From the IMG/VR virus record IMGVR_UViG_3300037042_002125, positions 1 to 64,000 of that record: 64,000 nt of DNA, one strand, 5' to 3'. A program made the translations under genes and the position numbers. The notes beneath the pieces are model-generated. The model worked only from the letters and a program-made list of their open reading frames with translations. It was not told the origin of the DNA and did no database searches. Within the stretch, counting starts at the first letter, position 1. Every line of letters starts with the position of its first letter. Of this stretch, positions 3,506 through 60,786 are shown piece by piece.

Positions 3506-3531
3506 AAACACTTATTAACAGAAAGCGTAAT

Positions 3532-6684: not shown

Positions 6685-6702
6685 TTTTTATAAGGAAAAG
6701 AT

Positions 6703-7029: not shown

Positions 7030-7030
7030 T

Positions 7031-7523: not shown

Positions 7524-7543
7524 GCCTGCATTAGCCGAAAGTC

Positions 7544-7572
7544 TTGCATAGCATGCCTTACTATGCTATTAT
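7544..7572 (+). promoter_or_regulatory. sigma70-like promoter
   Basis: TTGCAT-17 bp-TATTAT with TG extension. Confidence 0.55.
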
Positions 7573-7593
7573 TTGTCAATTAAGAAAGAACAT

Positions 7594-10212: not shown

Positions 10213-11056
10213 AATTTTAATAATGGGCCTACCAGGGTCTGGCAAAACAACACTCGCAATAGCACTTAAGAAGTATTTAGAAGATAATGGTACCGCAAAC
10301 AACATGTCATTATCTAATGCGATGACTACTGACATGCTTATCGGTGATTATAAGGTCACCGTTGACTGGTTCAACGCTGATGAAATTCGTAAACGCTTCA
10401 ACGACTGGGACTTCAGCCAAGACGGCCGTATCAGACAATCGCTACGCATGGCAGAGTTCGCCCTGAAATCATCAGGTGATTTTGTTATCGCTGACTTTGT
10501 TGCACCGCTAGTGGAGATGCGAAATAACTTTAAGGCAGACTGGACTATCTGGATGGATACTATCGATCAAGGTCGTTTCGATGATACAAACAAAGCATTC
10601 GTACCACCCACTATATATGACTTCCGTGTCACTGAACAGAACGCAGACAAGTGGGCCGAGTTTATTGGTACACATATTCTTGAAAATCGGCGCCGCCCAG
10701 TGTTTAATTGGCAAAAAGAAACTGTTATGCTACTAGGAAGATATCAGCCTTGGCATCAAGGGCATAGGGCATTATTTGATATTGCTATTGCTAAAACAGG
10801 GCAGGTAATTGTACAGATACGAGATTGTCAGGGTTGGAACGGTAGCAATCCTTTTACTCTTAAACAAGTGGCAGACTATATTAGACGAGATCTCGACCCC
10901 TTATATCAGGGCCAGTATGAAATACAAATTGTGCCCAACATTGTTGAAATTAATTATGGACGCGACGTGGGCTATAAAATAAACAAAATAGATCTTCCAG
11001 ATGAGATACAACAAATATCTGCTACTAAAATTCGTAAGGATATGGGTATAGAATAA
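10202..11056 (+). CDS. cysC: adenylyl-sulfate kinase-like P-loop domain fused to HxGH nucleotidyltransferase domain
   Basis: GLPGSGKT, NADEIR, DFVAP, F..P; C-terminal GRYQPWHQGH and ISATKIR. Confidence 0.8.
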   Translation: MAGKILIMGLPGSGKTTLAIALKKYLEDNGTANNMSLSNAMTTDMLIGDYKVTVDWFNADEIRKRFNDWDFSQDGRIRQSLRMAEFALKSSGDFVIADFVAPLVEMRNNFKADWTIWMDTIDQGRFDDTNKAFVPPTIYDFRVTEQNADKWAEFIGTHILENRRRPVFNWQKETVMLLGRYQPWHQGHRALFDIAIAKTGQVIVQIRDCQGWNGSNPFTLKQVADYIRRDLDPLYQGQYEIQIVPNIVEINYGRDVGYKINKIDLPDEIQQISATKIRKDMGIE

Positions 11057-14562: not shown

Positions 14563-14613
14563 GTTAGTTCCTTGAGCGTTAAAGTTAGAGTTACTGTTAT
14601 ACTACGGTACTAA

Positions 14614-17600
14614 TTACGGTATGAAGCGTTCTTCTAGATCGTGCAATCTTGCTTCCTGATCTTTTGCTATCTCGATCAAGAATGCCAGCAGAGGCAAGTA
14701 CGACACGGACTTCATGCCGTTTGCGTCATCCTTAACAAGCTCTGGCAATATCTTTTCAAGCTCTTGGGCGATCAAACCGTATGACTTATCCCCTGACTCT
14801 TTCCACGTAAAGGACACACCCATAAGACGTTTGATTGTCTCAATAGGATTCTGGAGCAACCGAATGTTTTCCTTATACCTTATGTCTGACGTCGTGTTCA
14901 GTATAGTTGAGTTGAGCGTGCCTGTTGATGGGTCAAACGTCAACTTGGTGCTAGACACATACGTATCTGCTTGAGTACCTGATGTTGCGCGCGTCATCCC
15001 AACGTACTGCGTAACCACAGTCGTTGTGTCGTTCGTGATCGTTACTGAGGTGCCTGCAGGACCCGTAACCGACGGCCCTGTCCAACCAGTGGGGCCTGTG
15101 ACTGTGCTGGCCGCTCCCTCAGGACCTGTCCAACCTGTGGGTCCTGTAACCGACGGCCCTGTCCAACCAGTGGGGCCTGTGACTGTGCTGGCCGCTCCCT
15201 CAGGACCTGTCCAACCTGTCGGTCCAGTAGGCCCTGTGACGGTCGATGCTGCCCCGTTGGGACCTGTCCAACCTGTGGGTCCAGTAACCGTAGAAGCAGC
15301 ACCACCGGGTCCTGTCCAACCTGTGGGTCCTGTGACGGTCGAGGCAGCACCGTTAGGTCCTGTCCAACCTGTGGGACCTGTTACCGACGGCCCTGTCCAA
15401 CCTGTAGGTCCAGTTACCGTAGAAGCCGCCCCTGTAGCGCCAGTAGGACCTGTGGGTCCTGTTACCGTAGACGCAGCCCCGTTAGGTCCAGTCCAACCTG
15501 TGGGTCCTGTGACTGTGCTGGCCGCTCCCCCGGGACCTGTCCAACCTGTGGGTCCAGTGACGGTCGAGGCTGCGCCTGTGGGTCCTGTTACCGACGGCCC
15601 AGTCCAGCCTGTAGGACCTGTAGGACCTGTGACGGATGGACCTGTCCAACCTGTAGGTCCTGTTACCGTAGAAGCAGCACCGTTAGGTCCTGTCCAACCT
15701 GTGGGACCTGTTACAGTAGACGCTGCGCCTGTGGGTCCTGTGACTGTCGATGCAGCGCCTGTAGCACCAGTGGGACCTGTGACTGTTGAGGCTGCACCAC
15801 CAGGCCCTGTCCATCCAGTGGGTCCAGTAACCGAAGGCCCTGTCCATCCAGTGGGGCCAGTTACGGATGGGCCAGTTACGGATGGGCCAGTAGGTCCTGT
15901 AATAGATACTATAGGTGTCTCAGCTACCTTCCAGTTTGTGCCGGTGCTGTTGTATACCAATACAACGTAAGCACCGCTGACGTTTGCAGACAGGCCAACT
16001 GCATCACCTTCAATGGTTTTGCCACCAGCAACCGCAATAAGCACTGGGTTCAAGCTACATTGGTTCGCAACGTCAAACAGACCAGCTCTATCACCATCTG
16101 AAGGAGAGGCTGGCAGTGTGATAGTAAACTCACCACCTGTACTATCTACTCGCACAACCTCATTCAATCCTACTGAATAAGCAGATGTCTTGATTGGAGT
16201 ATAGTTTACTTCGTAAGGACCTGTAGGGCCAGTAACTGAGGGACCTGTTGGTCCAGCAACGGTACTATCAGCTCCTGTTGGGCCAGTCAACGATGCTCCT
16301 GTTGGGCCAGTCAACGATGCTCCTGTTGGACCTGTGACAGAGGGGCCAGTCCAGCCAGTGGGACCTGTTACCGACGGACCTGTCCAACCTGTAGGTCCTG
16401 TGACTGTCGAGGCTGCCCCTGTAGCGCCAGTAGGACCAGCAACTAAGGCCACATTGTTGACGTAGAGACCAGAATTGTCTACCCTAATCCGCTCGCAGGT
16501 TCCAGCACCAAGCAACAGGGTACAGACGCAGCCAGCAGCACCGACCAAGGAGCCGATCACAGTGTTGTTAACACCTGTAGTAATCGCGTTACCCGCGTTA
16601 GCACCAATCGCTATGTTGTTACCTGTGGCGTTTGATGCGTACAAGGCGCAGCAACCGATACCGATATTATTATTACCTGTGGTGTTGCATGTTAGAGATT
16701 GAGATCCTTGAGCAATGTTGTTACAGCCTGTAGTATTACAGTAGAGCGCCGAGTATCCTTGGGCACTGTTGTTACAGCCTGTGGTGTTGGCGCATAACGC
16801 TGTGTTACCTTGAGCAATGTTGTTACAGCCTGTGGTGTTTTTCTTAAGCGCCATGTAGCCTACGGCCACGTTATTTGACCCAGCAGTGTTAGCTACTATG
16901 GCATTGTATCCAATAGCCGTGTTGTAGCATCCCGTGGTGTTACCGTATAGTGACCCATAGCCTAAGGCCACGTTACTCATGCCGTAAGTGTTAAACTTTA
17001 GAGCTTGTGATCCTATCGCCACATTAAAATGACCGGTAGTATTGCTACACAGAGTAAGACAGCCTGCCGCGAAATTGCGGCTACCTGTGGTATTCCCGTA
17101 CAGAGAACAGAAGCCGAAGGCGAAGTTACTGTAGCCAGTAGTTGTCTTGGCAAGAGCGCCTCGCCCAATTGCTACGTTATTCGAGCCATTGGTAATAGCA
17201 GCCAACGCACTAGCACCAACCCCAAAGTTATTGTAGGTGGCTGTGAGACTAGGATTACCAGTGAGTGCAACATTGTTGATGTAAAGGCCACTGTTATCAA
17301 CCCTTATACGTTCGCAGGTTCCAGCACCGAGGAGCAAGGTGCCTACACAACCTGCGGCTGCTGGTAGAGAACCAATAACAGTGTTATTGTTTCCAGTGGT
17401 TATGGCGCCACCCGCCCAGTAGCCTATGCCTATGTTACACGATCCAATCGTGTTCAGTCCGAGCGCGCAGTAGCCTTGGGCGATGTTATTGCAGCCTATT
17501 GTATTTTTGGCGAGACCGTAGGCTCCTATCGCAACGTTGTAGCTACCTGTGGTATTGCAACATAAGGCTATGAATCCGATGCTAGTATTGTATCCACCGA

Positions 17601-20283
17601 GCGTGTTGGCACGTAGTCCGAGGCAGCCTATAGCAATATTGTAGTCACCATGGGTGTTACCGTAGAGAGCCTTATTTCCTATTGCTATGTTATTACAACC
17701 AGTGGTGTTGGAGTATAACGCCATGTATCCTTGGGCGATATTGTCACTACCGTAGGTATTCTTGCAAAGGGCTGCGTACCCTATTGCAGTGTTGCTCATG
17801 CCTGTGGTGTTGGCGTAGAGTGCATTAAAACCTGACGCGAAATTATTACAACCAGTAGTGTTGCCGTAGAGTGTCTTGCAGCCGTGAGCAAAGTTGTTGC
17901 AACCAGTGGTATTCCCGTACAGAGCACAGAGGCCGAAGGCTGAGTTGTTACTGCCAGTAGTACTCTTGGCAAGAGCGCCTCGCCCAATTGCTACGTTATC
18001 ATGACCAATGGTAATAGCAGCCAACGCGCTTGTACCAATAGCCAGGTTGTTGTAGGTAGCACTTAGACTAGGATTACCAGTGAGTGCAACATTGTTGACG
18101 TAGAGACCACTGTTATCAACCCTAATCCGCTCGCAGGTTCCGGCACCTAGGAGGAGCGTACAGACGCAGCCTGCGGCTGCGGGTAGGTTTCCAATAACTG
18201 TGTTGTTAGCGCCTGTGGTTATACTCTTACCTGCAAACGCACCAATTCCGATGTTGCTACCAGCAGAATTTGCACCATAAAGAGAGCAAATTCCTATTGC
18301 AATGCTGCAACTGCCGGTGGTATTGTATCTGAGCCCATAGAATCCTATGGCAACGTTATTAGCGCCGGTGGTGTTCTTGTAGAGTGCCTTGTACCCTTGG
18401 GCAACGTTACTAGAGCCGTATATGTTACATGCAAGAGCTTGATATCCTTGAGCAAAGTTATCCCTACCTGCGGTGTTGCAATATAGGGACATGCATCCTT
18501 GGGCGAAGTTATTGCTACCAGTAGTTGTCTTGGCAAGGGCACAGACACCAATCGCAAGATTGTTAACACCTGTAGTTACTGAAGCCAACGCACCTGTACC
18601 AATAGCCAGGTTGTTGTAGGTAGCACTAAGACTAGGTGTTGCCCCCGTAGGGCCAGTGACAGAAGACCCACCTGGACCTGTCCAACCTGTGGGTCCTGTG
18701 ACTGTGCTGGCCGCTCCACCTGGACCTGTCCAACCAGTGGGACCTGTTACAGTAGACGCTGCACCAGTTGGGCCAGTGACAGTAGACGCAGCCCCTGTAG
18801 CACCAGTAGGGCCTGTTACTGTAGAATCAGCACCACCAGGTCCCGTCCAACCTGTGGGACCTGTGGCGGTGCTGGCTGCTCCAGTTGGACCTGTTACAGT
18901 AGACGCAGCCCCTGTAGCACCAGTAGGACCTGTGACGGTGCTGGCTGCTCCACCTGGACCTGTCCAACCTGTGGGACCTGTTACAGTAGACGCTGCACCA
19001 GTTGGGCCAGTTAACGACGCGCCTGTTGGGCCAGTCATGCTCGTCCACCCTTGGACAGTTGCAAGTTCAGCGTTGGTCAAGTGGTTGTATTCGTTGGCTA
19101 TCCCACCTTGCAGACCAGCAAGCAGATTGTGAGTTCCTATAGATACAGCCGTATTTGTAATGAGAGATGCGTTGATACGGACGGGCGTCCTCATCAGTGA
19201 GCATAAGCCTAGGCCAGCAGCATTTACCAGCCAAGTGAATTGATAGATGGCGACGAGTTCTTCTACAGGCGCACCGACCATTGAAAAGGAACCAAACGTT
19301 TCTGCGTAAGCTGTGGCGGTTGTAGTGAACAACGCACGACCTGGCACCCACATGAAGCACTCTTGGCCTTGAACGTTAGTACAGCACAGGTAGTAGTTGA
19401 CGTAACGATTCGAAGCAGCCGTAACTGCGGTCATTGTGCCTGCGTTGTCGTACTGGATACCACCAGCACCTGTGTACTTGAAGGGCACCAGACTACGCTG
19501 CCATTCCCAAGTGGACGCACCTGTGCGGTACATGATGGAGTAGAACAGATTCGATGTTGCGTTACCAGCAGTGACTGCAGGTAATGTTTCGTAAATGTCT
19601 TGATCGAAGATGTACGCGGTGCTAATTGCACACGTCTTATTAGCGTTGACGGCACTTGCTACTGTAGGGCCGGTAAGCACCGCACCACTAGAGTACTGAG
19701 TACCTTCTGTCAAGTGCTCGATCATCAAGTCACGCCGGGTTATCAAAACGGCATGGCGCTCCTCTGCCATAATGTACGTTGGTGTCAACCCAGAATTACG
19801 CGAGATTGTCACAATAGGTATTATGCTTGGGAGAGATAGGTCCCAAACAGTTGTGCTATATGACAACGTGCCGTCTGTTGCGTCGATGTAGATATAGTAC
19901 ATCGTTGTCGTCGCAGTTGCATTAGGCAAAGCGAGGGTCTTGCTGCCTGTTACGGTGTACTTTACGCCTGCACGATAGTAAGACCAAGGATTTGACCCAC
20001 CAGCGGTTGGTGCAATCGTGAAAGTACCGATGAATGGGGTTGTGCCCACAGCATCGGCAAAAGAAATCGTGGTTTCAGTTTGGTTCAGAAAACCGCACAT
20101 CTGAGTGTCTACGCGAGCTGCATCAGCATTTGCGCCTTGAGCTGCTGACGCGTAATCTACACCGGCTGTAGCCGCACTAAGGGCGCCAGCAGTTAACTTT
20201 GCCAAGCCACTTAGGGCTGTGTCGAGGGTTGTGTTGCCGAGGACGACTAGGCCATTTTTGGCCTTAAAAGGGACGTTTGCCAT
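14614..20283 (-). CDS. long tail fibre with collagen repeats, Cys-rich NTTG/NxAIG repeats and C-terminal intramolecular chaperone (peptidase S74)
   Basis: [28 protein letters not shown]; start placed at [11 protein letters not shown]. Confidence 0.88.
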
Positions 20284-20368
20284 TTCGCTTCCATTCCACG
20301 AAAGAGTTAAGAGAGGTCCTCTGTTACGAAGACCTCCCATAAGGACTACCTACTGATTAGATGTATAA

Positions 20369-22903
20369 TCAGACCACCAACATTGTTTTGCTGATGTTGA
20401 TAGTTGCAGACGTTGCCGCAGCCATCGTAACAATAAGACGAGCGTTACCGCCGCTAATATCGGCAGTGAAGTCGCCCAACACGCCGTTGGTTTCAAGAAC
20501 AGCGTACTCAGTCTTTGTCGTCGTCGTACCGTTATGGATCACCATTATCTCAGACACTTGGTAGTCAGTACCTTGCGTGATTTGAACAAGGTACTTGCAC
20601 GACCGGTACGTTGCAACTGCCCACGAATCAACTGCTGTAGCAGATACTGTAGCAACCGTAGCCTGGACAACGTCCTTGTTGGCGATAACTGCACCAGCAG
20701 ACAGAGATTCCAGTGTAGCGCCACCAATCGTCAGATTCTTGGCAATTGCAACACCGCCGCTAAACTGCATAGAGCCAGAAGACAGGTCGGTACTATCTGT
20801 GGTGTTAGTGAACGTCAGAGCAACCGCAGTAGTTGTACCACGACCAGTGACAGAGGCCAATGTGTCTGCCTCTGCGGTCAGGTACGTGCTAGTATCAATG
20901 CTGTACGTGTCAGCAGCAGTCTTCTTCAGGAAGCCTGCTCCTGCACCAGTCATTGCACTAGCCAAGGCCGTTATAGCTGGGCCAACGGTGTTCTTGATCG
21001 TAACGTTAGAGGCACTGTTGGCATCCCAAGAGCCGCTAAACGTAACTTCAACACCAGTGTTGGTTGCACCAGCCGTAGAAGTCGTTGCACCCAACGTACC
21101 AGAGTTAACCGTCGGCAAATCAGATGTCAACGCCATCGTGCCAGTTGCAGCCGGCATAGTGATGGTCGTCGAACCAGCAATAGCGGTCGGGACCAAGGTC
21201 GTAGAGCCAGATGTAGCTCCAGCAAACGCTACACTAAGAATGCCTGTAAGCGCCAGGTTAGCGGATGCACGATTAAGAGCGACCGACGTCGTACCGATGT
21301 TGACATTGCTATTACCTAGAACTGCACTAGGGATAGTACCGGACAAATTGCCAGCAGTCAGCGAGGTCAAGTTAGCGCCACTTACTGCGCCGAACGAGCC
21401 TGACCACGTACCGCTAGTGATTGTACCGACTGAGGTCAAGCTAGACGTAACAATCGTTGAACCGAGTGTTGTACCAGACAGGACTGCCACATTGTTGATC
21501 TTGAAGCCCTTGCCGGTAGGCACATTCCAGTCTTCACTTGATGTCCAATTTGCATTTGCAAGGTCCCAAATGATCGTCTTGTCTGTGGTGCCGAGCAACG
21601 TAATACCACCACCATCCGCTGTGATGTTGGTAGGTACTGCCACGTTACCCATCTCAATGTTCTTGTCCAACACCTTTATGGTCTGCGTATCAAGAGTTGT
21701 CGTAGTGCCCTTGACTGTCAAGTTACCGTTCACCACCGTTTCAGTGTTGGTATTACCGATGTTGACTGTATTAACGCTAGTGCCAGATGCCGCAATGTTA
21801 ACGATACCAGTTGTCAGACCAGCAGCAATGGACAGCGTACCAGTGGTCAAGCTTGCCCAAACACTTGGCGTACCAGTAGTGGTTGTGTCCACAGCCAACG
21901 TAGCCGCTGCACTGCCATTGTAGGTAGTGCCAGTGGACCAGACCAAGCCAACGCCAGCAGTCAGGCTAGCAAGATTTGATCCAAGTGCAACGCCAGAAAT
22001 GGTCGAGTTCGACAGAGCGCTGTTGGGGATGCTAGTAAAGTTAGTACCAGTCAACGTTGGTGTGTTAGACCAAGTAGGAGCAGTTGGGCTACCAACCAAA
22101 ACTTGGCTAGTAGTACCAGCAGCAAGAAACGCTGTAGTGTCAGCGCCTGATTGATACGGCAGGGAACCTGCAGCACCACCAGCAAGGTTAGTAGCCTTGG
22201 CCGCTGTACCAGATGTATCTTGGTTCAACGTCGGTACGTCAGCGGCCTGGATCGTTGACATCACCACGTTTGTGCCATTACCACGCAGGTAAGAGCCGCT
22301 TGTAACCGCCGCTGCAAACGCGTTCATTGCCAGTTGTGCGCTAACCTGACCAGAACCACCGTTTGCCAATGCCAAGGTGCCGCCAACAGTGACGGTGCCA
22401 CTTGTTGCAGTGTTAGGTGTAAGGCCTGTGGTGCCAAACGAAATGCTTGCAACACCAGTGGACGATGTCAGGTATGTGCTTGTATCCAAGCTATACGTGT
22501 CAGCAGCAGTCTTCTTGACGAAGCCTGTAGTTACGCCAGTCATCAACGTAGCTAGTGCGGAGATTGCAGGTCCCACCACGTTCTTGATCGTGACGTTCGA
22601 GGCGCTGTTGGCAGACCAAGATGCACTGAACGCTGTTTCAACCGTTGTGTTTGTTGCACCAGCGGTTGAACTAGCTGCACCCAAAGTACCATCGTTAACC
22701 GTTGAACCCAGCTGAGAAGTCAACGCAATAGTACCAGAGAGGTCTGGCATCGTCAACGTTCTGTCTGCAGACAGAGTCGTTGGGATAAGGGAAGAGGTAT
22801 AGGCGGAGTTAGCATCTTTGACTGCAGGCGTAACAAGTTGGCCTGCTGCATTGAATACTGTTACTGTTCCTATCTGCAAACTGTCTTTGATTTTGAATGA
22901 CAT
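20369..22903 (-). CDS. Thr/Ser/Gly-rich virion fibre/structural protein
   Basis: Fibre-like composition, internal ~80-aa duplication, C-terminal YRSCKYLVQ..SEIMVIHNG domain typical of large myovirus structural proteins. Confidence 0.75.
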   Translation of the reverse strand: MSFKIKDSLQIGTVTVFNAAGQLVTPAVKDANSAYTSSLIPTTLSADRTLTMPDLSGTIALTSQLGSTVNDGTLGAASSTAGATNTTVETAFSASWSANSASNVTIKNVVGPAISALATLMTGVTTGFVKKTAADTYSLDTSTYLTSSTGVASISFGTTGLTPNTATSGTVTVGGTLALANGGSGQVSAQLAMNAFAAAVTSGSYLRGNGTNVVMSTIQAADVPTLNQDTSGTAAKATNLAGGAAGSLPYQSGADTTAFLAAGTTSQVLVGSPTAPTWSNTPTLTGTNFTSIPNSALSNSTISGVALGSNLASLTAGVGLVWSTGTTYNGSAAATLAVDTTTTGTPSVWASLTTGTLSIAAGLTTGIVNIAASGTSVNTVNIGNTNTETVVNGNLTVKGTTTTLDTQTIKVLDKNIEMGNVAVPTNITADGGGITLLGTTDKTIIWDLANANWTSSEDWNVPTGKGFKINNVAVLSGTTLGSTIVTSSLTSVGTITSGTWSGSFGAVSGANLTSLTAGNLSGTIPSAVLGNSNVNIGTTSVALNRASANLALTGILSVAFAGATSGSTTLVPTAIAGSTTITMPAATGTMALTSDLPTVNSGTLGATTSTAGATNTGVEVTFSGSWDANSASNVTIKNTVGPAITALASAMTGAGAGFLKKTAADTYSIDTSTYLTAEADTLASVTGRGTTTAVALTFTNTTDSTDLSSGSMQFSGGVAIAKNLTIGGATLESLSAGAVIANKDVVQATVATVSATAVDSWAVATYRSCKYLVQITQGTDYQVSEIMVIHNGTTTTKTEYAVLETNGVLGDFTADISGGNARLIVTMAAATSATINISKTMLVV

Positions 22904-22926
22904 GGCGAATCCTTAAAAATGTTAAA

Positions 22927-23838
22927 CTAGACTAAGCGCCGAAACTTGAAAACGTAATTTGAATCTGAATCTGTAGGTGTGTTTGAATACATCTGCAATT
23001 TCAGATGGAGGGGATTTGCTGTCTCCGTTCGGTAGGTACGAAGATACAGACTTCCTTCTCCACTTGCCCCTGCCCGGTGTAATGCAATTTCGTCTGTAGG
23101 CAACGCCAGCGCGGAATTTGTGCTACCGCTATACCAACTCATAGTACCTGAGTAATATTCGTTGTTATTAGTTCCCCCAGAACTTAGATCATTTGCATAC
23201 ACTTGGACTATATAGGTACCTGTTTCAAGGTCAGTGTTGTTTATGCCTACGTCAGACCAATCAGTTGTGAGAGTCAATGCTTTAGTGAAAATCGCCACTT
23301 GATCAATGGCAGTCCCTTCGCTAAGTATCAATCCTCCGCCGTGTTGAAAAGTTCCTGTTATTTCAACATTGCCAGTTATGGTTCCCCCAGTTAGTGGTAA
23401 GGTTTCGTCTGCAATATCGTTCGTGTCCACCAACATTGAGTCAACGGTTGAACCCGGTGGCAGATTCGTGTAAACACTATCGCTCGGTAGCAAGCCATAT
23501 TTAAGCTTGGTTGATGGTTGGCATAGCAGAGAATACGAACCATTAGTAGGAGCATCGTCTTCAGTACCAAGCTCGTCCCATACGATGGTTCCACTTAAGG
23601 TATAGTTGTCAACAGGGGTTACTGTCGTAAATTTATACCTGTGAATTATTCCCGGAATAGGGGTTCCTAAAGCCAAGTCAGTTGCAGGAACATAGAGTAA
23701 GAACCCTACCTGTACATCGTATGCACCATTCCCTGTAGCGTCTGATTGATTTTCGAAAACCGCATTTGCGAAAGTATATTCACCTGGGCTACCACCTACA
23801 AAACTGTCAACGTATAAGGTTGCATTTATAGGTCTCAC
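22927..23838 (-). CDS. putative virion/tail protein
   Basis: LPLTGGTITG fibre motif; lies in the fibre cluster. Confidence 0.65.
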   Translation of the reverse strand: MRPINATLYVDSFVGGSPGEYTFANAVFENQSDATGNGAYDVQVGFLLYVPATDLALGTPIPGIIHRYKFTTVTPVDNYTLSGTIVWDELGTEDDAPTNGSYSLLCQPSTKLKYGLLPSDSVYTNLPPGSTVDSMLVDTNDIADETLPLTGGTITGNVEITGTFQHGGGLILSEGTAIDQVAIFTKALTLTTDWSDVGINNTDLETGTYIVQVYANDLSSGGTNNNEYYSGTMSWYSGSTNSALALPTDEIALHRAGASGEGSLYLRTYRTETANPLHLKLQMYSNTPTDSDSNYVFKFRRLV

Positions 23839-23853
23839 TGGAAGTACCTTTCA

Positions 23854-26124
23854 TTAAAAGTTTGCAAGAATATGTATACCAGTAGTAGACGCGGGCAATG
23901 CTCCCCATTGAAATGTACCAAAGTCACCAGCAGTATTTGTCACTATGGTAGATGCAACGACCACCAAACTATTGCCATCTTGGCGAACCGCTTGATTCGG
24001 AATGATGATGTCGTCCATGCCAGTGTCCGGACCTACACCATTGACATTTCCCTTAGGAACAGTCAGTGCATATATCGTTCCTGTTCGAGTACCTACTGCT
24101 AAGTGAATACGAATAGACATTAGCTGTGCATCTCCACCAGAAGGTGCGCTTAACGTACCACCATTGATAGAGCCAGCGCCTGCGTTATGAGCAAAGTTGA
24201 AGCCCATAGAATATGCACCATCACTGCCTGATAGGTTGCCAATTGGCGAACACGCAACCGTAAAGGTATCAGCATCATAAGAGGTTATTACCGCAACTTG
24301 GTAATCAACATTAGTGTTGTGTATGATTGCTCTATTGCCTGTAACGTGACCATGGGCAACCCTGGTGATAGTCAACGCAGAGCCAGAGCGTGTCCACGCC
24401 AAGCCGATGCGAACCGGGCTTGACGACATGCAGCTAACACCTTGACCAGTGGTAGACACCATCTGGTAGCGTGAAACAGGATTGTAGATATCGCCGCTAG
24501 TAGAGCCACCACCGGAAGGTCCAGTGGGGCCAGTGGGGCCAGCAGAGCCAGATCCAGTTGGGCCAGTAGCGCCTGCTGATCCGCCAGATCCTGTTGGGCC
24601 CGTTACTGTACTATCTGCACCTGTTGGGCCTGTTAAAGCGGGACCGGTAGACCCTGTTGGGCCAGTGACTGTAGATGCAGCACCAGTAGGTCCAGTAACT
24701 GACGGGCCAGTGGGGCCTGTTCCGCCTGGACCTGTTGGGCCTGTCGCACCGTTAACTCCTGCACCTGTTGCTCCAGTTGGCCCTGTTACTGTAGATGCGG
24801 CACCTGTTGGGCCTGTGACCGATGGACCTGTAGGTCCTGTTGAGCCGTTAGATCCAGAAGAACCAGTTGGCCCTGTTACTGTAGATGCGGCACCTGTTGG
24901 GCCTGTGACCGATGGACCTGTAGGTCCAGGAACAGTTGAGTCAGCACCAGTGGGACCTGTAAGAGAGGAACCTTGGGGACCAGTAAGAGAAGCGCCAGTA
25001 GGACCTGTTGCACCATTAACACCATCGGTACCTGTGGGTCCTGTGACTGTAGACGCAGCGCCAGTAGGACCTGTAAGAGAAGCCCCAGTTGGGCCTGTTA
25101 CTGAAGAACCTTGAGGACCTGTAAGAGATGCTCCTGTTGGACCTGTTAAAGAATTACCTTGGGGACCTGTTGGCCCAGGAGTTGTTGATGCGGCGCCAGT
25201 AGGACCAGTGACAGAGGGACCAGTAGCACCATCAATGCCAGCAGAGCCAGTTGGGCCAGTAGCACCATTTGAACCAGTAGGACCAGTTGCACCGTCAACG
25301 CCGTTCGTGCCAGCAGTGCCTGTTGGTCCTGTTACTGACGGACCCGTAGCGCCGTTCGTACCAGCGGTTCCCGTAGGACCAGTTGCACCACCAGAGCCAT
25401 AGGCACCAGTGGGGCCAGTAGCTCCATCCGTGCCGTTCGTACCAGCAGAGCCAGTGGGTCCAGTAACGCCGTCTGCTCCTGTCGATCCAGTTGGGCCAGT
25501 AGCACCGTCTGTCCCGTTCGTGCCGTCGATACCAGCAGCGCCAGTAGGACCTGTTGCTCCGGAGCCTGGACCAGTGGGGCCAGCGGTTCCGGTAGGACCA
25601 GTGGCGCCGTCTACGCCTGCAGAACCTGTGGGTCCAGTTCCACCAGGACCTGTTGGACCAGGTACGGTACTATCAGCACCAGTAGGGCCGGTTATGGATG
25701 TGCCATCATTTCCTGCTGGACCCGTAGGTCCTGGAACTGTTGACGTAGCACCAGTAGGACCAGTAGCCCCTCCGCCTGCGCCAGTAGGACCTGCAGAACC
25801 AGTTGGACCTGCCGCACCAGTTGGACCAGTGGAGCCTCCGCCTGTACCAACAGGGTCAATGAAGTCCATTGAATTCTGCTGGTATACTGGAAGACCATTT
25901 ACTGGGTCATACAATGTAACTGAATACAATTTTCCGTTTGGAATGTAGACAGTGATAGAACCTGTTGCATCTGTAGTTGTAGATCCAGTTGCACTAACAA
26001 GCAAACCTGGTTGCGTATAAATACGTGCAGGTTGATTAGACAAAGATTCATCAATTTGTGCGATGTACCCCACGTAGGGGTTATTATTGGCATCAACGAA
26101 GGTTTTGTGAAAAAGCTGTAGCAT
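23854..26124 (-). CDS. collagen-like virion protein
   Basis: About 440 aa of GPT/GAT triplets between globular ends. Confidence 0.85.
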
Positions 26125-51762: not shown

Positions 51763-51796
51763 ATGGGGCGTAGATTTACGTAAATCTACGCCCCAT
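51763..51796. terminator. 34-bp perfect palindrome between convergent genes
   Basis: ATGGGGCGTAGATTTAC|GTAAATCTACGCCCCAT. Confidence 0.75.
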
Positions 51797-51815: not shown

Positions 51816-52091
51816 TTAACGTTTGTGTGGAATCAAATACTCTTCACCTTCAAAGTCTCCGGGGTCTGTTGGGACTTTGTACGAGTGAGTTTCTGGAACT
51901 GGTGCTGGTTGTGCCTTATGTCTCTTGCTTGTTAAGTGTGACGAAATAGGCGGGACGCTAACCTGGGAAGTGTGGTGATCTAGAGCGGCATGCCACGCCC
52001 TACGCATGAGGTATATCTCTTTCACAGATGGGTGAGGAGAGAATTTCTTGGCAGCTATCTGACTATCTATCCAAGTATCAAAATCTGACAT
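51816..52091 (-). CDS. hypothetical protein
   Basis: AGGAG RBS downstream of rSAM gene. Confidence 0.7.
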   Translation of the reverse strand: MSDFDTWIDSQIAAKKFSPHPSVKEIYLMRRAWHAALDHHTSQVSVPPISSHLTSKRHKAQPAPVPETHSYKVPTDPGDFEGEEYLIPHKR

Positions 52092-52105
52092 GGTATCTCC
52101 TAATG

Positions 52106-53224
52106 TTATGGCATCACTTCTACGAACTCGTATACCTCACAGGTCATAATCTTCTCCCGCACAGGCGAGGATACGTTCTTGAACCATTCGAGCGGAGAGT
52201 GCCTGTCTATTTCTTGACCCATGAAACGGATTAGATCACATATTGGGTCTGTGACATTGGAACGATACGCGAGATCGCGTTCAACGTAGCCCTTATTCAA
52301 GTTCTTTAGACAATTACCTCGGCACCAAGAGTAAGCCTCACACTTGGAACATGGCATTTCAGGGGTTAGTTGGAGAGGACTTGGCTTAAGCCAGTTGTTC
52401 TGTATATCTCCCATGCACATCGCAGGATCGTACAGCATATCAGGACACGGATAGATTGCACCGCTTGGCATAACGTTTAGCAAATGTGTTGATGTGCGGC
52501 ACTGAGTTTGGCCGTCATACAAATACTGTGCTAGGTTAGGAAACACTTTGTTTCGTACAATGCCCATAATAGGAATCATGGGGTACAATACGTCAGTAGA
52601 CTCGAAGAAACGGTCGATGAGTTTGGTCAACACGGTTTTCCGTTTACTCATCGAGTCGCCTCCGTACATAGCGTCTGCGACGAATTGCCAATACATATAG
52701 TCAAAGGGTGTACTGCCACTAACCAGTTCGTCAAGTTCTTCAAACGTCGTGTCTGGGTTGCTCCACGTAACTCTTGCAGTAACCGACCCACCAATGTGGT
52801 GACGGACCTCTTTCAACTTAGCTATTACTTGACGGTAGATTCCTCTACCTCTATAGTGGTCGGTAGTGGACTCGCCGCCGTCGATTGATGCTAGAACGTT
52901 TGATAGTTTTCCTAATGCCCATACTGGCATCTTGTCTATAAGAGTAGCGTTGGTCTGAAGCTGGAAACGGAAGTGAGGGAACCTCTCCATTACCTCAAGC
53001 ATCATAGGTTTGTTGAGCGTAGGCTCACCGCCGTAGAACGTGACGTAGATGTCCTTACCGCGCAGATGCATTTTGACGAACGCCTCAAGCTGGTCCAAGC
53101 TGTACTCGATCTTTGTCTGCGAGTCACGTACATCACCAACGCCCAATGAGCAGTATGTGCATTTGAGATTGCACTTGAGCGTGGTCAGCAATTGAAGTTC
53201 TACTTTGCCGCACTGTATTGTCAT
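52106..53224 (-). CDS. radical SAM/SPASM enzyme (resembles AF0577-type putative peptide-modifying family)
   Basis: CNLKCTYC, YGGEP, C-terminal C...G.IYPC...CSKC....WCRGNC...C. Confidence 0.85.
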   Translation of the reverse strand: MTIQCGKVELQLLTTLKCNLKCTYCSLGVGDVRDSQTKIEYSLDQLEAFVKMHLRGKDIYVTFYGGEPTLNKPMMLEVMERFPHFRFQLQTNATLIDKMPVWALGKLSNVLASIDGGESTTDHYRGRGIYRQVIAKLKEVRHHIGGSVTARVTWSNPDTTFEELDELVSGSTPFDYMYWQFVADAMYGGDSMSKRKTVLTKLIDRFFESTDVLYPMIPIMGIVRNKVFPNLAQYLYDGQTQCRTSTHLLNVMPSGAIYPCPDMLYDPAMCMGDIQNNWLKPSPLQLTPEMPCSKCEAYSWCRGNCLKNLNKGYVERDLAYRSNVTDPICDLIRFMGQEIDRHSPLEWFKNVSSPVREKIMTCEVYEFVEVMP

Positions 53225-53946
53225 TGAGGTGCCTCTATTATAATGCAATGCTGTATCTCTGGAGATACAAACCTTTTTATTGTGCAGGTTGGGAACACGG
53301 CTTTTATAAATTCATCTTTGTGAAACGCCAGCATCAAGTGCTGCTCAGTCAAAGCCTCTAGTTCTTCGTTCTTCAACAACACATTAGCAGACCCAACTAA
53401 GTACCCGTACCAACGTCCTTTAAATTTGTTGCGTACACTTAGCTTCAACTTCTCTTGGAAGCCTAAACGTTTCTGCAGGAAGAAAGATAGCGGGGCTTGC
53501 GCGTCTAAGCTCAAGTAGGTAGTCATCAACACACCGCCTGGATTAAGCAGGGGCATCAACTCGTTGCCTATTGTCTCTTGCATCTCCGTTACTGCCGTTG
53601 TGGTGAATACAGAGAACACAATGATGACGTCAAACTTTTGATCAGTTACTGACGTAGGCAAAGGCTCACCTTTAACCCCCTTGAAGTTGTATACCAAATT
53701 GAAGCGGTTGTACAAATGCCAATGCGCCTCAGGGAAAGCAGCATTACCATTTTCTAATGCGGCCTGTGACACATCCAAGCAGTGATAATTCTCTGGTTTG
53801 ATGGTGCAGTTGGGATCCCGTAAAATATTCCCCCAGTTGCCACCAAAGTCCAATACCTTTTTGTCCTCCCACCAACTTAGCGGTTGCCCCAACTGGGTTG
53901 CAAAGTATGAGAAGATTGGGTAGTAATTGTGAACGTGGTTATCCAT
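53221..53946 (-). CDS. class I SAM-dependent methyltransferase
   Basis: VLDFGGNWG, LDVS, FDVI..FSVFT, LNPGG. Confidence 0.8.
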   Translation of the reverse strand: MDNHVHNYYPIFSYFATQLGQPLSWWEDKKVLDFGGNWGNILRDPNCTIKPENYHCLDVSQAALENGNAAFPEAHWHLYNRFNLVYNFKGVKGEPLPTSVTDQKFDVIIVFSVFTTTAVTEMQETIGNELMPLLNPGGVLMTTYLSLDAQAPLSFFLQKRLGFQEKLKLSVRNKFKGRWYGYLVGSANVLLKNEELEALTEQHLMLAFHKDEFIKAVFPTCTIKRFVSPEIQHCIIIEAPQ

Positions 53947-57601: not shown

Positions 57602-58042
57602 CTAAATCCAGGAGTCATCATCCTTAGCAGCCTTCTTGGAAGCCTTTTTGTCACCTTTGGACTTCTTGGACTTCTTGTCAGCTTTTTCTGCCTTTGCTTT
57701 CTTAGCAGGAGGCAGGCTTGCTTTGGCAGCGACCTTCTTGGCTGCCACTTTCTTAGCAGCGACCTTCTTGGCTGCCACTTTCTTAGCAGCTACCTTCTTG
57801 GCTGCCACTTTCTTAGCAGCTACCTTCTTGGCCGGAACAGCATTGTCTTTTTTGGCCTGCTTTGCAGCAAGCTTGGCGGCCTTCCGCTCTGCTTTAGATG
57901 GCTTAGCCGCTTTTTCCGCCTTTACCTTCTTTGCCTTTACCTTCTCAGCCTTCGCTGGCTTTGCAGCCTCGTTGGTGTCCAAAGCCTTGATTGCCTTGAA
58001 CAGGGCCTTGACTTGGGTCAGGAGTTCTTTTTTGGTTGACAT
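57602..58042 (-). CDS. histone H1-like Lys/Ala-rich DNA-binding protein
   Basis: 7 KKVAA pentapeptides, very basic. Confidence 0.8.
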   Translation of the reverse strand: MSTKKELLTQVKALFKAIKALDTNEAAKPAKAEKVKAKKVKAEKAAKPSKAERKAAKLAAKQAKKDNAVPAKKVAAKKVAAKKVAAKKVAAKKVAAKKVAAKKVAAKASLPPAKKAKAEKADKKSKKSKGDKKASKKAAKDDDSWI

Positions 58043-58449: not shown

Positions 58450-59178
58450 TTAGAACACTGCCATGAACCTCGATCCAATAGGGGTTTTCATCTCACCCTG
58501 TAGAAGCGGCTCAGTATTAAAATACTTTGACAAATCTTCTACGCTATGCACCAAGTTGGTGTGATCGTCTGCAGGCATGTTAGTTCCTTGCAAAAGCCAA
58601 CGTATAGTAGGGTGAGCCCTACTTATGAAATTCAATATACGGTTAGGTTCAAAGTGTTCAATTCCTGTCCATACAACCAACGAGCCAGCATCCAAAGAAG
58701 CGGGATTTAAATCCCATACATCGGTATGTCCCCAGGATGAATTATTATGCGTCCTGTTATCTCTGTGGGCAGTCTCTGATACTACTAAGGCAGTTTTGTC
58801 CAAGTCAAAATAGTACCTGCTTGTCTGATCATCCTTGTATCCAATTCGGAGAGCATCAAATGCGCCTTGCATACCAAACCATGACCCAAAATAGTAAACC
58901 TTCTTCATAGGGAATTGAGCCCACAGCCACAAGTAGGCATTTGATGCCCACCGGCGACTAAGTATCTGGAAGGGGCTTAGAGCATCCAACACAGACTGTT
59001 TGAACTCTATATCCTTATGGTAGCTTTGCCTCACAAGTGATGCAACAAAATTCCCAGGAGTAGTGTCTTGTATATGTATCAGCTTGGTGCATACTGCCCT
59101 GTTACTTGCATTGTTGCTGACAAACCATTCAACTTCTAGTCCTCCGTAACACTGTACATGGTCAGCTTTGGCAGTCAT
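58450..59178 (-). CDS. methyltransferase-like protein
   Basis: YYFGSWFG, FDLD, TGIEH, DH.N, RFM pattern of phage class I MTase-like proteins. Confidence 0.55.
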   Translation of the reverse strand: MTAKADHVQCYGGLEVEWFVSNNASNRAVCTKLIHIQDTTPGNFVASLVRQSYHKDIEFKQSVLDALSPFQILSRRWASNAYLWLWAQFPMKKVYYFGSWFGMQGAFDALRIGYKDDQTSRYYFDLDKTALVVSETAHRDNRTHNNSSWGHTDVWDLNPASLDAGSLVVWTGIEHFEPNRILNFISRAHPTIRWLLQGTNMPADDHTNLVHSVEDLSKYFNTEPLLQGEMKTPIGSRFMAVF

Positions 59179-60590
59179 TTAGATGCCCCTATCTCACGTT
59201 GCTTAAGGTCCTGATCGCCTCTGTTTGACTGAACGTAGTCTTCACGCATGTCCACAGGAAAATCAAGTTGCTCCTTAGCAGTAATTGATTTGTGTAGACT
59301 GTGGCACCACTCACGCAGAGTAGGATGCACAGACGTCTTGGTACGAAGGGCCAGAACGTACTTCAACTGTGACTTGGACCAGAACATACCTGTAGGCACC
59401 TGAGTCATCATTGGGTGTGCATACTGCAACTCAAACACAGACCCAGATTGAAAGTTGGTAAGGACTACCAACTGATCGTATATGTCAAGCGCCTTACGGA
59501 ACAGATCAAAATCAACTGCCTTAAGTATCTTGTGGTAGAAATGATTGATAGCCCCAGCCCTTGCGTTGACTAGTGGCATCTGATTCTTACCATTGCGATG
59601 CCTCTGCAAATCCCTGTATGACCCAAAGTCAATGCAGCCTTGAATCCCATACCAAGTGTTATCATCATCGTTTGCCAAATACTGACCTGACCCACCTAGA
59701 TTAACTACATCACGAACGTTTGCATAGCTTGTTGAGCCGTATACCTTGCGGGTCATGTAGAACTCACGAGCAGGTGTATCACTAATCTTGCGTATAGGCT
59801 TGAATGTGTTTGGGTACCTAGCAAATAACAAATCGTTGATATAGATAGCGAGCTTACGCACCTCCAGCAACGGATGTGTAGATAACTGGGTCAGGTGGTC
59901 TCGGTATTGCCTAAGAGACATATACATGGACAAGGACGTCGTTGCGCCACACGGTAGCAACCCCCTAGCGATGTCAAAGGAGATTGCTTTGCACGTCTTA
60001 TTCCACAAAGCTTCCCTTTTCTTGTCGTACGCAAGTAAAGCAGACATCTGATCTCCGCCAAATGACGCAGAGGCCCCGCTAGGGGTATTATCGTCAGGCA
60101 TGATGCGGTCACGCTTGTCCTTGTATGCCGCCTTCACCCACGCTTCGATCTTAGGCAAGTAGGCAACGTATAGCTCGCGCCACTTTTCCACAGCGTCCTT
60201 GCTGAACTCTGACTCGGCGTAGAATGGAACCTTAGAGAAGTCTTGGTATCGTGTGCTACGTTCCTGCCCGTTGTATAAAGGATTGTCTTGCATAGCCTTA
60301 GCAGCCAGCATAGACACACCCTCAATAAACACAGGTACGTTGGCGCAGTCGGCAATTGAGGCATGTCCGTAGTCAAGGTAGTAAGTCTTGATAGCTGCCT
60401 TAATTCGCTTCTGCTTTGTGTCGGCATCGCCATCTGCCAAATCAGCTAGGCGTGCTTCGATAGGCATGTCACTGCGGCTGTACATGCTCTGCAACATAGC
60501 CAGAATCTCAGGATCATTCAGTTCGTTATGATCTGGAATGAACACATGGGGCTCTGGGTTTATAGCTAACTCAAGTTCTTTTGTTTTCAT
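59175..60590 (-). CDS. thyX: FAD-dependent thymidylate synthase (tandem-domain ThyX)
   Basis: GHASI, QERSTRY, DIARGLLP, RDLQRHR. Confidence 0.88.
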   Translation of the reverse strand: MKTKELELAINPEPHVFIPDHNELNDPEILAMLQSMYSRSDMPIEARLADLADGDADTKQKRIKAAIKTYYLDYGHASIADCANVPVFIEGVSMLAAKAMQDNPLYNGQERSTRYQDFSKVPFYAESEFSKDAVEKWRELYVAYLPKIEAWVKAAYKDKRDRIMPDDNTPSGASASFGGDQMSALLAYDKKREALWNKTCKAISFDIARGLLPCGATTSLSMYMSLRQYRDHLTQLSTHPLLEVRKLAIYINDLLFARYPNTFKPIRKISDTPAREFYMTRKVYGSTSYANVRDVVNLGGSGQYLANDDDNTWYGIQGCIDFGSYRDLQRHRNGKNQMPLVNARAGAINHFYHKILKAVDFDLFRKALDIYDQLVVLTNFQSGSVFELQYAHPMMTQVPTGMFWSKSQLKYVLALRTKTSVHPTLREWCHSLHKSITAKEQLDFPVDMREDYVQSNRGDQDLKQREIGASK

Positions 60591-60786
60591 CAGAAGTCTT
60601 TTTAGAAAAGTCAATCGTGCATTTCATGGTAGGCACATTGGCGCTTATGAACGCCAGGTAGCATACGGGGCAGACCGGGTCACCACCTATAACAGGGTGA
60701 TCGCTGTGTTTGTATGCGTGTGGGCTATATTGTTCTGTGTGCCCACACTTAGGACACGAATAGGGTTGAGGCAGTATGTAAGTCAT
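60571..60786 (-). CDS. small zinc-ribbon protein
   Basis: CPKC and CPVC. Confidence 0.7.
   Translation of the reverse strand: MTYILPQPYSCPKCGHTEQYSPHAYKHSDHPVIGGDPVCPVCYLAFISANVPTMKCTIDFSKKTSDENKRT

What the first reader, a model, noticed from the sequence alone, without database searches (positions are those of the whole stretch)
51816..53946. Phage-encoded radical SAM/SPASM enzyme coupled to a methyltransferase
Seen: the MTase stop overlaps the rSAM start (ATGA), SPASM cysteines appear complete, and a 91-aa ORF follows. Established: SPASM enzymes typically modify peptides or proteins. Inference: a phage post-translational modification pathway. The substrate is unknown; candidates are the 91-aa ORF, the Cys-rich fibre repeats or host proteins.
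Basis: partly seen in the sequence, partly recalled or inferred. Interest (0 to 1): 0.6.

Follow-up and report, generated by a model that had tools for sequence, protein, structure and literature searches.

The report
Host-derived radical SAM cassette in jumbo phage
A large freshwater phage carries a working radical SAM/SPASM enzyme taken from its probable Comamonadaceae host, together with a small fast-evolving phage-only protein; its link to the neighbouring methyltransferase is not conserved, and its substrate is unknown.

Summary
On the minus strand lie a 241-aa class I methyltransferase (53221-53946), a 372-aa radical SAM/SPASM enzyme (52106-53224) and a 91-aa ORF (51816-52091). The methyltransferase stop and the rSAM start overlap as ATGA, and all seven SPASM cysteines are present.

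The proposed methyltransferase-rSAM pathway is not supported by conservation:
- A syntenic sister phage has the methyltransferase but neither the rSAM nor the 91-aa ORF.
- About 1000 bacterial orthologues (57-75% identity) are stand-alone genes with no methyltransferase and no conserved neighbour. They occur in 15 of 301 sampled Burkholderiales genomes.

The phage gene nests inside a Comamonadaceae clade, has phage-like base composition, and is under strong purifying selection (dN/dS 0.04-0.1). It has no peptide-recognition (RRE) domain. Its fold resembles anaerobic sulfatase maturase and CteB, and it falls below the cut-off of its nearest family, TIGR04084.

Deeper viral relatives (41-52% identity) sit beside thymidine-hypermodification genes: an amino acid:DNA transferase in both, and a 5-hmdU DNA kinase in one. 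Another relative sits beside a PP-loop ATPase and an acetyltransferase, whose homologues occur 45 kb away in this phage.

The substrate remains open. A nucleobase adduct, the 91-aa ORF and a host protein are all possible.

The parts
53221..53946 (-). Class I SAM-dependent methyltransferase, 241 aa. It predates the cassette and is present alone in the sister phage.
   Evidence: Pfam Methyltransf_12. AF2 model pLDDT 95; its nearest PDB folds are small-molecule and natural-product methyltransferases at TM about 0.5. The sister-phage copy is 66% identical and has no rSAM beside it.
53221..53224 (-). ATGA overlap of the methyltransferase stop and the rSAM start
   Evidence: Read directly from the sequence. 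A GAGG Shine-Dalgarno lies at 53232-53235.
52106..53224 (-). Radical SAM/SPASM enzyme, 372 aa, without an RRE, with an anSME-like fold
   Evidence: Family and homology searches. Alignment. AF2 model pLDDT 93 and fold search. Phylogenetic tree. dN/dS 0.04-0.10.
53150..53173 (-). CX3CX2C motif (C18, C22, C25) that binds the SAM-cleaving [4Fe-4S] cluster
   Evidence: Nearly invariant in alignment A1.
52238..52501 (-). SPASM region (residues 242-329) with seven invariant cysteines for two auxiliary Fe-S clusters
   Evidence: TIGR04085 domain hit at residues 242-310. Invariant columns in alignment A1.
51816..52091 (-). 91-aa ORF found only in this phage lineage: part-variable N-terminal part, hypervariable middle, near-invariant C-terminal 24 residues
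   Evidence: AGGAG Shine-Dalgarno. Only three homologues among 5.8 billion proteins, all in close phage relatives. Codon-level variation analysis.
51763..51796 (.). 34-nt perfect palindrome, a bidirectional terminator between the cassette and the convergent 238-aa gene
   Evidence: The sister phage has an analogous hairpin directly after its methyltransferase.

Best explanation
SHOWN.
- A 1.4-kb two-gene cassette (rSAM/SPASM enzyme plus a 91-aa phage-only ORF) lies between an older methyltransferase gene and a terminator. It sits in the DNA-metabolism module of a roughly 222-kb jumbo phage from freshwater lakes and sediments.
- The rSAM gene came from a Comamonadaceae-type (Burkholderiales) bacterium. 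There its orthologue is a stand-alone, patchily distributed gene.
- In the phage the gene has taken on phage base composition and is under strong purifying selection, so it is a working auxiliary enzyme.
- The ATGA coupling to the methyltransferase is a lineage-specific result of where the cassette sits. It is not a conserved partnership.

INFERRED MECHANISM.
- The N-terminal [4Fe-4S] cluster (C18/C22/C25) cleaves SAM reductively to a 5'-deoxyadenosyl radical, which abstracts a hydrogen from the substrate.
- Two SPASM auxiliary clusters (seven Cys, so one iron may be open) handle electron transfer or substrate ligation, as in anSME and CteB.
- Orthologues 57-75% identical work in bacteria without the methyltransferase, without the 91-aa ORF and without any fixed neighbour. 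The enzyme therefore most likely acts on a substrate that already exists in the host cell and is not encoded beside it.

MY BEST GUESS FOR THE SUBSTRATE CLASS (about 0.3 on its own): a modified nucleobase, such as an amino-acid adduct, in nucleic acid.
- Two of the more distant relatives sit in viral replication-gene contexts with an amino acid:DNA transferase (plus a 5-hmdU DNA kinase in one). A third relative, of unknown origin, sits with a PP-loop ATPase and a GNAT acetyltransferase.
- The methyltransferase could then add a later methyl group. The precedent is the rSAM MnmL plus methyltransferase MnmM pair, which acts on cmnm5U in tRNA.

The confidence of 0.55 is for the shown part together with the inference of a shared, non-adjacent substrate. 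The nucleobase guess alone is about 0.3.
For: Origin and independence of the parts:
- The phage rSAM groups with L012, and the pair nests in a Rhodoferax/Polaromonas/Ramlibacter clade (SH-aLRT 97) inside the Betaproteobacteria.
- Bacterial orthologues are 57-75% identical and share no neighbour across the 12 loci analysed. They were found in 15 of 301 sampled Burkholderiales genomes.
- The sister phage has the methyltransferase only. The methyltransferase was not found in three rSAM-positive bacterial genomes, and the 91-aa ORF was not found in five.

Function retained in the phage:
- GC3 is 54% in the phage gene, the same as its neighbours, against 75-95% in bacterial orthologues.
- dN/dS is 0.04-0.10 among phage variants.
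- All family-invariant residues are kept.

Enzyme type:
- There is no RRE: the CX3CX2C motif starts at residue 18 and the first strand at residue 7.
- The best PDB folds are anSME 4k36, CteB 5wgg/5why and ChlB 9gm3, at TM 0.6-0.7.

Nucleic-acid lead:
- L038 (50-52% identity; an IMG/VR viral contig) reads PolA | rSAM | ligase | nuclease | ADDT (PF18724) | SNF2 | P-loop kinase | HMUDK_hel (E 3e-43).
- L032 (41% identity) has ADDT two bases upstream of the rSAM, followed by a SAM-synthetase fragment.
- L033 (43% identity) reads rSAM | PP-loop ATPase-like | GNAT with overlapping stops and starts. Homologues of these last two genes, and of another rSAM in L033, lie at 97-104 kb in this same phage.
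- rSAM enzymes are known parts of thymidine-hypermodification clusters (PMC8989533).
- The MnmL/MnmM precedent is described in bioRxiv 10.1101/2023.12.21.572861 and 10.64898/2026.05.18.725915.
Against: - This phage has no detectable ADDT, HMUDK_hel, aGPT-Pplase3 or HMUD2, and no tblastn match to the L038 or L032 versions.
- The bacterial orthologues sit among ordinary chromosomal genes such as gyrB, mutL and hemN. Bacteria are not known to hypermodify thymidine.
- All family members are acidic to neutral (pI 4.9-6.7), which is unusual for enzymes that bind nucleic acid.
- MnmC(o) is over its cut-off in 11 of 15 rSAM-positive genomes against 190 of 301 overall. There is therefore no sign that the enzyme replaces MnmC.
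- The M6 gp53 isomerase belongs to a different, SPL-like rSAM group (PMC8989533).
- Insertion here and deletion in the sister phage cannot be told apart without an outgroup phage.
- The tree was built with a quick search, and its deep branches are long.
Confidence: 0.55

Rival explanations
1. RiPP-like pathway. The 91-aa ORF is the precursor, the rSAM modifies its near-invariant C-terminal 24 residues (for example a C-C or C-O crosslink, or an epimerisation), and the methyltransferase may methylate the product.
For: - The rSAM and the ORF appear and disappear together as one indel.
- The two genes are 14 nt apart and the ORF has its own strong Shine-Dalgarno.
- The C-terminal 24 codons show 1 non-synonymous and 3 synonymous-only variable columns. 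The middle 22 codons show 10 non-synonymous columns plus indels.
- SPASM enzymes are mostly peptide maturases, and the nearest folds include CteB, ChlB and SuiB.
Against: - The enzyme has no RRE.
- Orthologues 57-75% identical have no such peptide beside them. The ORF has no homologue in five orthologue-bearing genomes or anywhere outside this phage group.
- The ORF has no cysteine and lies downstream of the enzyme.
- All phage variants are 94-98% identical at the nucleotide level, so the co-occurrence counts as a single lineage.
Confidence: 0.25
2. An anSME-like protein-modifying enzyme that acts on a host or phage protein encoded elsewhere, for example by oxidising a Cys or Ser side chain or crosslinking a structural protein.
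For: - The best structural matches are anaerobic sulfatase maturase chains, which also lack an RRE and act on proteins encoded elsewhere.
- The stand-alone position of the bacterial orthologues fits a substrate encoded at another locus.
Against: - TIGR03942 scores 58.8 bits against a cut-off of 349.
- No candidate substrate was identified.
- The Cys-rich 1908-aa fibre gene is more than 30 kb away and nothing links it to the enzyme.
Confidence: 0.15
3. A small-molecule or cofactor enzyme: an auxiliary metabolic gene acting on a metabolite, with the methyltransferase as an unrelated or loosely related tailoring enzyme.
For: - The methyltransferase fold is closest to natural-product and sugar methyltransferases. 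Its bacterial homologues lie in glycosyltransferase clusters.
- SPASM or twitch enzymes such as BlsE and DesII appear among the fold hits.
- The acidic pI fits a metabolic enzyme.
Against: - No biosynthetic neighbours are conserved in bacteria.
- No riboswitch was found near eight bacterial loci.
- The viral relatives sit in DNA-modification contexts instead.
Confidence: 0.15

Closest known systems
TIGR04084 (AF0577-family radical SAM/SPASM proteins; function unknown; found in archaea, some bacteria and the eukaryote Carpediemonas)
   Same: It is the best NCBIfam match (E 1.2e-45, covering residues 12-313). Length and rSAM+SPASM architecture are the same, there is no N-terminal RRE, and the seven SPASM cysteines are the same.
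   Different: The score of 156 bits is below the curated cut-off of 225. Identity is only 25-33%. The window protein belongs to a separate, compact clade of Betaproteobacteria and phages.
Anaerobic sulfatase-maturating enzyme (anSME, PDB 4k36-4k39) and the sactisynthase CteB (5wgg/5why)
   Same: Three-cluster rSAM/SPASM fold at TM 0.6-0.7. Like anSME, it has no RRE and no substrate gene beside it.
   Different: About 20% identity. TIGR03942 and TIGR03974 score far below their cut-offs. CteB has an RRE and a Cys-rich peptide substrate.
Phage thymidine-hypermodification clusters (5-HMUDK + amino acid:DNA transferase + tailoring enzymes, including the rSAM isomerase M6 gp53)
   Same: Relatives of the window rSAM at 41-52% identity lie beside an ADDT (L032) or within about 2 kb of one and about 4-5 kb of the 5-hmdU DNA kinase genes (L038) in two viral-type contigs. 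The window gene also sits in a DNA-metabolism module with ThyX, topoisomerase II, RuvC and HNH genes.
   Different: The window phage has no detectable ADDT or HMUDK. M6 gp53 is SPL-like, not a SPASM enzyme (PMC8989533).
MnmL (YtqA/YhcC) radical SAM enzyme + MnmM methyltransferase of tRNA mnm5s2U synthesis
   Same: An rSAM gene beside a class I methyltransferase. Their substrate, cmnm5U, is the RNA counterpart of the glycinyl-thymidine made by amino acid:DNA transferases (PMC8989533; bioRxiv 10.1101/2023.12.21.572861).
   Different: This is an analogy only. MnmL is not a SPASM enzyme and its family was not among the 25 best NCBIfam matches shown; the methyltransferase matched no NCBIfam family at all. 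There is no phyletic complementarity with MnmC.

Membership tests
Radical SAM superfamily (PF04055) | CX3CX2C motif for the SAM-binding [4Fe-4S] cluster, and a GGE SAM-binding motif | tested here: met
   C18, C22 and C25 are present and G65-G66-E67-P68 is conserved. Pfam E 3.2e-13, 50.6 bits against a cut-off of 29.5.
SPASM domain (TIGR04085 / PF13186) | Seven-cysteine motif CX9-15GX4C ... CX2CX5CX3C ... C | tested here: met
   C242-X12-G255-X4-C260; C292-X2-C295-X5-C301-X3-C305; C329. The cysteines are invariant in 50 sequences and G255 is nearly so. TIGR04085 scores 38.2 bits against a cut-off of 27.
TIGR04084 (rSAM_AF0577) | Whole-protein score over the curated cut-off of 225 bits | tested here: not met
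   156 bits. It is the nearest family, but the protein is not a member.
Anaerobic sulfatase maturase (TIGR03942) | Score over the cut-off of 349 bits | tested here: not met
   58.8 bits. The similarity is in fold only.
RiPP radical SAM maturases | N-terminal RiPP recognition element (RRE/PqqD-like domain) | tested here: not met
   The radical SAM motif begins at residue 18. The AF2 model has only one strand before it. Matches to RRE-bearing maturase models start at model positions 71-116, that is, after their RRE regions.
RiPP radical SAM maturases | A precursor peptide gene next to the enzyme, conserved across the enzyme's orthologues | tested here: inconclusive
   A 91-aa ORF accompanies the rSAM in this one phage lineage. 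It is missing beside all bacterial orthologues and from five of their genomes.
Thymidine hypermodification system | 5-hmdU DNA kinase and amino acid:DNA transferase (aGPT-Pplase) in the same genome | tested here: not met
   PF18724, PF18723, PF18746 and PF18747 give no match in the 222-kb record, which is 93% complete. tblastn with the L038 and L032 proteins also finds nothing. The feature is met in the relatives: both genes in L038 and the transferase in L032.
Prokaryotic viperins (pVip) | Full-length match to the pVip models | tested here: not met
   Only the N-terminal rSAM core (residues 15-142) matches, at 42 bits.
MnmL/MnmM-type tRNA xnm5U pathway | Phyletic complementarity with MnmC(o) | tested here: not met
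   MnmC_Cterm is over its cut-off in 11 of 15 rSAM-positive genomes against 190 of 301 overall.

The most novel reading that the evidence does not exclude
This compact clade is a new kind of SPASM radical SAM enzyme that reshapes amino-acid-type adducts on nucleobases. It would act on DNA in phages that carry an amino acid:DNA transferase and perhaps on RNA in Betaproteobacteria. In the window phage it would work with the adjacent methyltransferase and the distant GNAT/PP-loop ATPase/rSAM cluster (97-104 kb) to build a DNA hypermodification, without the known kinase and transferase entry steps.
Probability: 0.15. Interest if true: 0.8.

Novelty: new member of a known kind. Interest (0 to 1): 0.5.

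Why it matters
- The tidy reading, a phage RiPP operon with a coupled methyltransferase, rests on an adjacency that one indel created.
- The enzyme belongs to an uncharacterised, strongly conserved rSAM/SPASM clade shared by freshwater Betaproteobacteria and their phages. The phage copy has been kept under strong selection, so it does something useful during infection.
- Relatives of this clade lie next to thymidine-hypermodification genes. This gives a concrete, testable lead to new DNA-modification chemistry by a SPASM-type enzyme. So far only an SPL-like rSAM, M6 gp53, is known to take part in such pathways.
- The culturable bacteria Thauera aromatica and Chromobacterium sp. ASV23 carry the orthologue, so its function can be studied without isolating the phage.

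Tried and rejected
- Complex prediction of the rSAM with the 91-aa ORF: no verdict (score 0.00; the partner's own fold was uncertain). This is not evidence either way.
- RaSEA (the archaeosine rSAM) as the identity of TIGR04084: dropped. NCBI names RaSEA separately (seen in PMC7465815) and no such family was among the top matches.
- MnmC replacement: no complementarity.
- FNR-box search upstream of 13 orthologues: only two weak two-mismatch hits and no pattern.
- Rfam scan of eight bacterial loci: no riboswitch near the gene.
- PADLOC: only generic rSAM-core matches to pVip.
- GenBank phages: no nucleotide match, and only two weak protein matches for the window rSAM. P0249 finds rSAM pairs in SPN3US-type jumbo phages at about 24% identity, too distant to use.
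- Searches for more relatives of this phage returned nothing new: viral contigs with the rSAM, the methyltransferase and the 238-aa neighbour, and metagenome contigs with the 238-aa neighbour. The direction of the indel (insertion or deletion) therefore stays open.
- Read laying on four lake and sediment runs: the cassette is present and no contig skips it. No RNA run holds it, so expression is untested.
I repeated the step from the stored alignment file.
Full report
WHAT IS THERE

The window is the first 64 kb of a 222,078-bp IMG/VR virus record that is estimated to be 93% complete. Three minus-strand genes match the finding:
- A 241-aa class I SAM methyltransferase at 53221-53946. Pfam Methyltransf_12 scores 37.6 bits against a cut-off of 30.
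- A 372-aa radical SAM/SPASM protein at 52106-53224. Pfam Radical_SAM gives E 3.2e-13, and the SPASM domain TIGR04085 scores 38.2 bits against a cut-off of 27.
- A 91-aa ORF at 51816-52091 with no family match.

- The rSAM ATG (53224-53222) overlaps the methyltransferase TGA (53223-53221) as ATGA. A GAGG Shine-Dalgarno lies 7 nt upstream.
- The small ORF begins 14 nt after the rSAM stop, behind an AGGAG.
- A 34-nt perfect palindrome (51763-51796) follows it. It ends both this gene string and the convergent 238-aa gene.
- The CX3CX2C cysteines (C18, C22, C25) are nearly invariant. The seven SPASM cysteines (C242, C260, C292, C295, C301, C305, C329) are invariant across 50 homologues down to 24% identity.

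THE PAIR IS NOT CONSERVED

The methyltransferase occurs without the rSAM:
- Its closest relatives, apart from near-identical sibling contigs, are 66% identical proteins on two contigs, L023 and L024.
- L023 is a syntenic relative of this phage. The upstream 369-aa gene, the methyltransferase, the convergent 238-aa gene, the 151-aa gene, the RuvC-like gene and the 421-aa gene all match in the same order.
- In L023 the methyltransferase stop is followed within 85 bp by a terminator hairpin and the convergent gene. There is no rSAM and no small ORF.
- The rSAM and the 91-aa ORF therefore form one 1.4-kb indel.

The rSAM occurs without the methyltransferase:
- It has about 1000 homologues. A 99% identical sibling (L011) has the same three genes.
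- An 83% identical copy (L012) has an unrelated 98-aa ORF upstream.
- Bacterial proteins of about 395 aa follow at 67-75% identity among the listed hits, and Gallionellaceae and Novimethylophilus orthologues at 57-62%. They come from Rhodoferax, Polaromonas, Ramlibacter, Rubrivivax, Thauera and Chromobacterium.
- In 12 bacterial loci the only protein shared by all is the rSAM itself. Neighbours include hemN and FNR-type regulators, an AmmeMemoRadiSam set, gyrB, mutL, an MFS transporter and an aminotransferase.
- The methyltransferase was not found in three of these genomes. Its own bacterial relatives (about 40% identity) lie elsewhere, for example in a glycosyltransferase cluster.
- The orthologue was found in 15 of 301 sampled Burkholderiales genomes.

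ORIGIN AND SELECTION

- A maximum-likelihood tree (quick search) places the window protein with L012. The pair sits inside a clade holding Rhodoferax, Polaromonas and Ramlibacter sequences (SH-aLRT 97). That clade sits inside the wider betaproteobacterial group. This indicates capture from a Comamonadaceae-type host.
- The habitat fits. The DNA is found in lake-water and sediment metagenomes from at least 12 studies.
- The transfer is not recent. The phage gene has 47% GC and a GC3 of 54%, like its neighbours. Bacterial orthologues have a GC3 of 75-95%.
- Among four phage variants the rSAM has dN/dS of 0.04-0.10, similar to the neighbouring 238-aa gene. It is therefore a working gene.
- The variable 23-aa N-terminal extension of the bacterial proteins is absent in the phage.

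THE 91-AA ORF

- It has only three homologues among 5.8 billion proteins, all next to the rSAM in close relatives of this phage.
- It has no match in five bacterial genomes that carry the orthologue.
- It evolves much faster than the rSAM: 80-92% protein identity against 98-99%, and dN/dS of 0.25-1.1. It has in-frame indels in a hypervariable middle.
- Its C-terminal 24 codons show 1 non-synonymous and 3 synonymous-only variable columns. It is a real, phage-specific protein with a constrained tail.
- It has no cysteine.
- All variants come from phages 94-98% identical at the nucleotide level. Its linkage to the rSAM therefore counts as a single lineage.

WHAT KIND OF ENZYME

- The nearest family is TIGR04084 (AF0577 family, function unknown) at 156 bits, below the cut-off of 225. 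Every characterised maturase model scores far below its cut-off.
- In a library clustered at 50% identity the clade is compact: a handful of clusters at 35-59% identity, then TIGR04084-type proteins at about 30%.
- The AF2 model (pLDDT 93) shows an rSAM barrel, a SPASM domain and C-terminal helices, with nothing before the barrel.
- The best PDB matches are anSME, CteB, ChlB and SuiB at TM 0.55-0.70.
- It is therefore an RRE-less, anSME-like three-cluster enzyme.
- The methyltransferase model (pLDDT 95) resembles generic small-molecule class I methyltransferases at TM about 0.5, which does not settle its substrate.

A LEAD FROM DEEPER RELATIVES

- The next branches below the bacterial clade lead mostly to viral-type contigs.
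- L038, an IMG/VR viral contig, carries a homologue 50-52% identical to the window rSAM. [quoted passage not shown]
- L032 carries a 41% identical homologue. It has clamp-loader and primase genes, and an ADDT gene ends two bases before the rSAM. A SAM-synthetase fragment follows. The two ADDT proteins are only 33% identical, so these are separate lineages.
- These genes make amino-acid-modified thymidine in phage DNA, and rSAM enzymes are known tailoring parts of such clusters (PMC8989533, PMC5889632). The characterised one, M6 gp53, is SPL-like rather than a SPASM enzyme.
- L033, a contig of 28% GC and unknown origin, carries a 43% identical homologue. This rSAM is translationally coupled to a 304-aa protein with an SGGxDS PP-loop motif and then to a GNAT acetyltransferase. 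Three more rSAM genes, an ATP-grasp gene and a sulfotransferase-like gene lie upstream.
- Homologues of the PP-loop protein, the GNAT and one of those rSAMs lie together at 97-104 kb in this same phage. A B12-type rSAM and a second PP-loop-like gene lie with them.

Limits of this lead:
- The window phage has no detectable ADDT, HMUDK, aGPT-Pplase3 or HMUD2.
- The bacterial orthologues are ordinary chromosomal genes.
- The whole family is acidic, with pI 4.9-6.7.
- I tested one specific version of the idea: that the bacterial enzyme replaces the oxygen-dependent MnmC step on cmnm5U in tRNA, as the rSAM MnmL does together with the methyltransferase MnmM (bioRxiv 10.1101/2023.12.21.572861; 10.64898/2026.05.18.725915). 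MnmC(o) is over its cut-off in 11 of 15 rSAM-positive genomes against 190 of 301 overall. There is no complementarity.

VERDICT

With good confidence:
- This is a host-derived, selectively maintained rSAM/SPASM auxiliary gene that travels with a phage-only small protein.
- It lies next to a methyltransferase, but that adjacency is not a conserved partnership.
- The enzyme is not a member of any characterised family.

With low confidence:
- My preferred substrate class is a modified nucleobase in nucleic acid (about 0.3).
- The rivals are a RiPP-like reaction on the 91-aa protein (0.25), an anSME-like reaction on another protein (0.15), and a small molecule (0.15).

The complex prediction for the rSAM and the ORF gave no verdict. 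No RNA data exist for this locus.

Noticed in passing
Same virus record, outside the window: G000 97,000-104,500 (L107:5068-12486): A second cluster reads GNAT | 339-aa rSAM | 524-aa B12-binding-type rSAM | 277-aa PP-loop-like protein (SGGVDSE motif) | 292 aa | 235 aa | 325-aa second PP-loop-like protein | 186 aa | GNAT. Homologues of three of these genes lie next to a 43% identical relative of the window rSAM in L033. The two loci of this phage may therefore serve one pathway.
   Followed up: partly
L038:2023-10594 and L032:5181-7238: In two viral-type contigs, SPASM-type rSAM genes of this clade sit beside (L032) or about 1.7 kb from (L038) an amino acid:DNA transferase gene. L038 also has 5-hmdU DNA kinase genes. 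L032 has a 42-aa SAM-synthetase N-terminal fragment right after the rSAM. I found no report of a SPASM-type rSAM in this setting in the papers I read.
   Followed up: partly
window 1-11000 versus 12000-26000: There are strong composition shifts: 34-37% GC in the first 10 kb (all plus-strand ORFs), 47-57% GC at 12-26 kb (very large minus-strand ORFs), and about 45% GC elsewhere.
   Followed up: no
window 14614-20340 (-): A 1908-aa Gly-rich protein carries 45 cysteines, many in NTTGCNN-type repeats. Nothing links the protein to the rSAM.
   Followed up: partly
window 57602-58042 (-): A 146-aa Lys/Ala-rich protein has seven tandem AAKKV repeats and resembles histone H1. It has no family match.
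   Followed up: no
window 59175-60614 (-): A 479-aa homologue of flavin-dependent thymidylate synthase ThyX (PF02511, E 3.5e-14). The profile is 191 positions long, so the protein must carry large extra parts. It lies 5 kb from the cassette.
   Followed up: no
L012:48-344: The 83% identical rSAM copy on this 54% GC contig is preceded by a 98-aa ORF with no match in the window phage. This is a third, unresolved context for the gene.
   Followed up: partly
L002:3084-4853: A group II intron with a reverse transcriptase lies a few kb from one bacterial orthologue. It is incidental.
   Followed up: no
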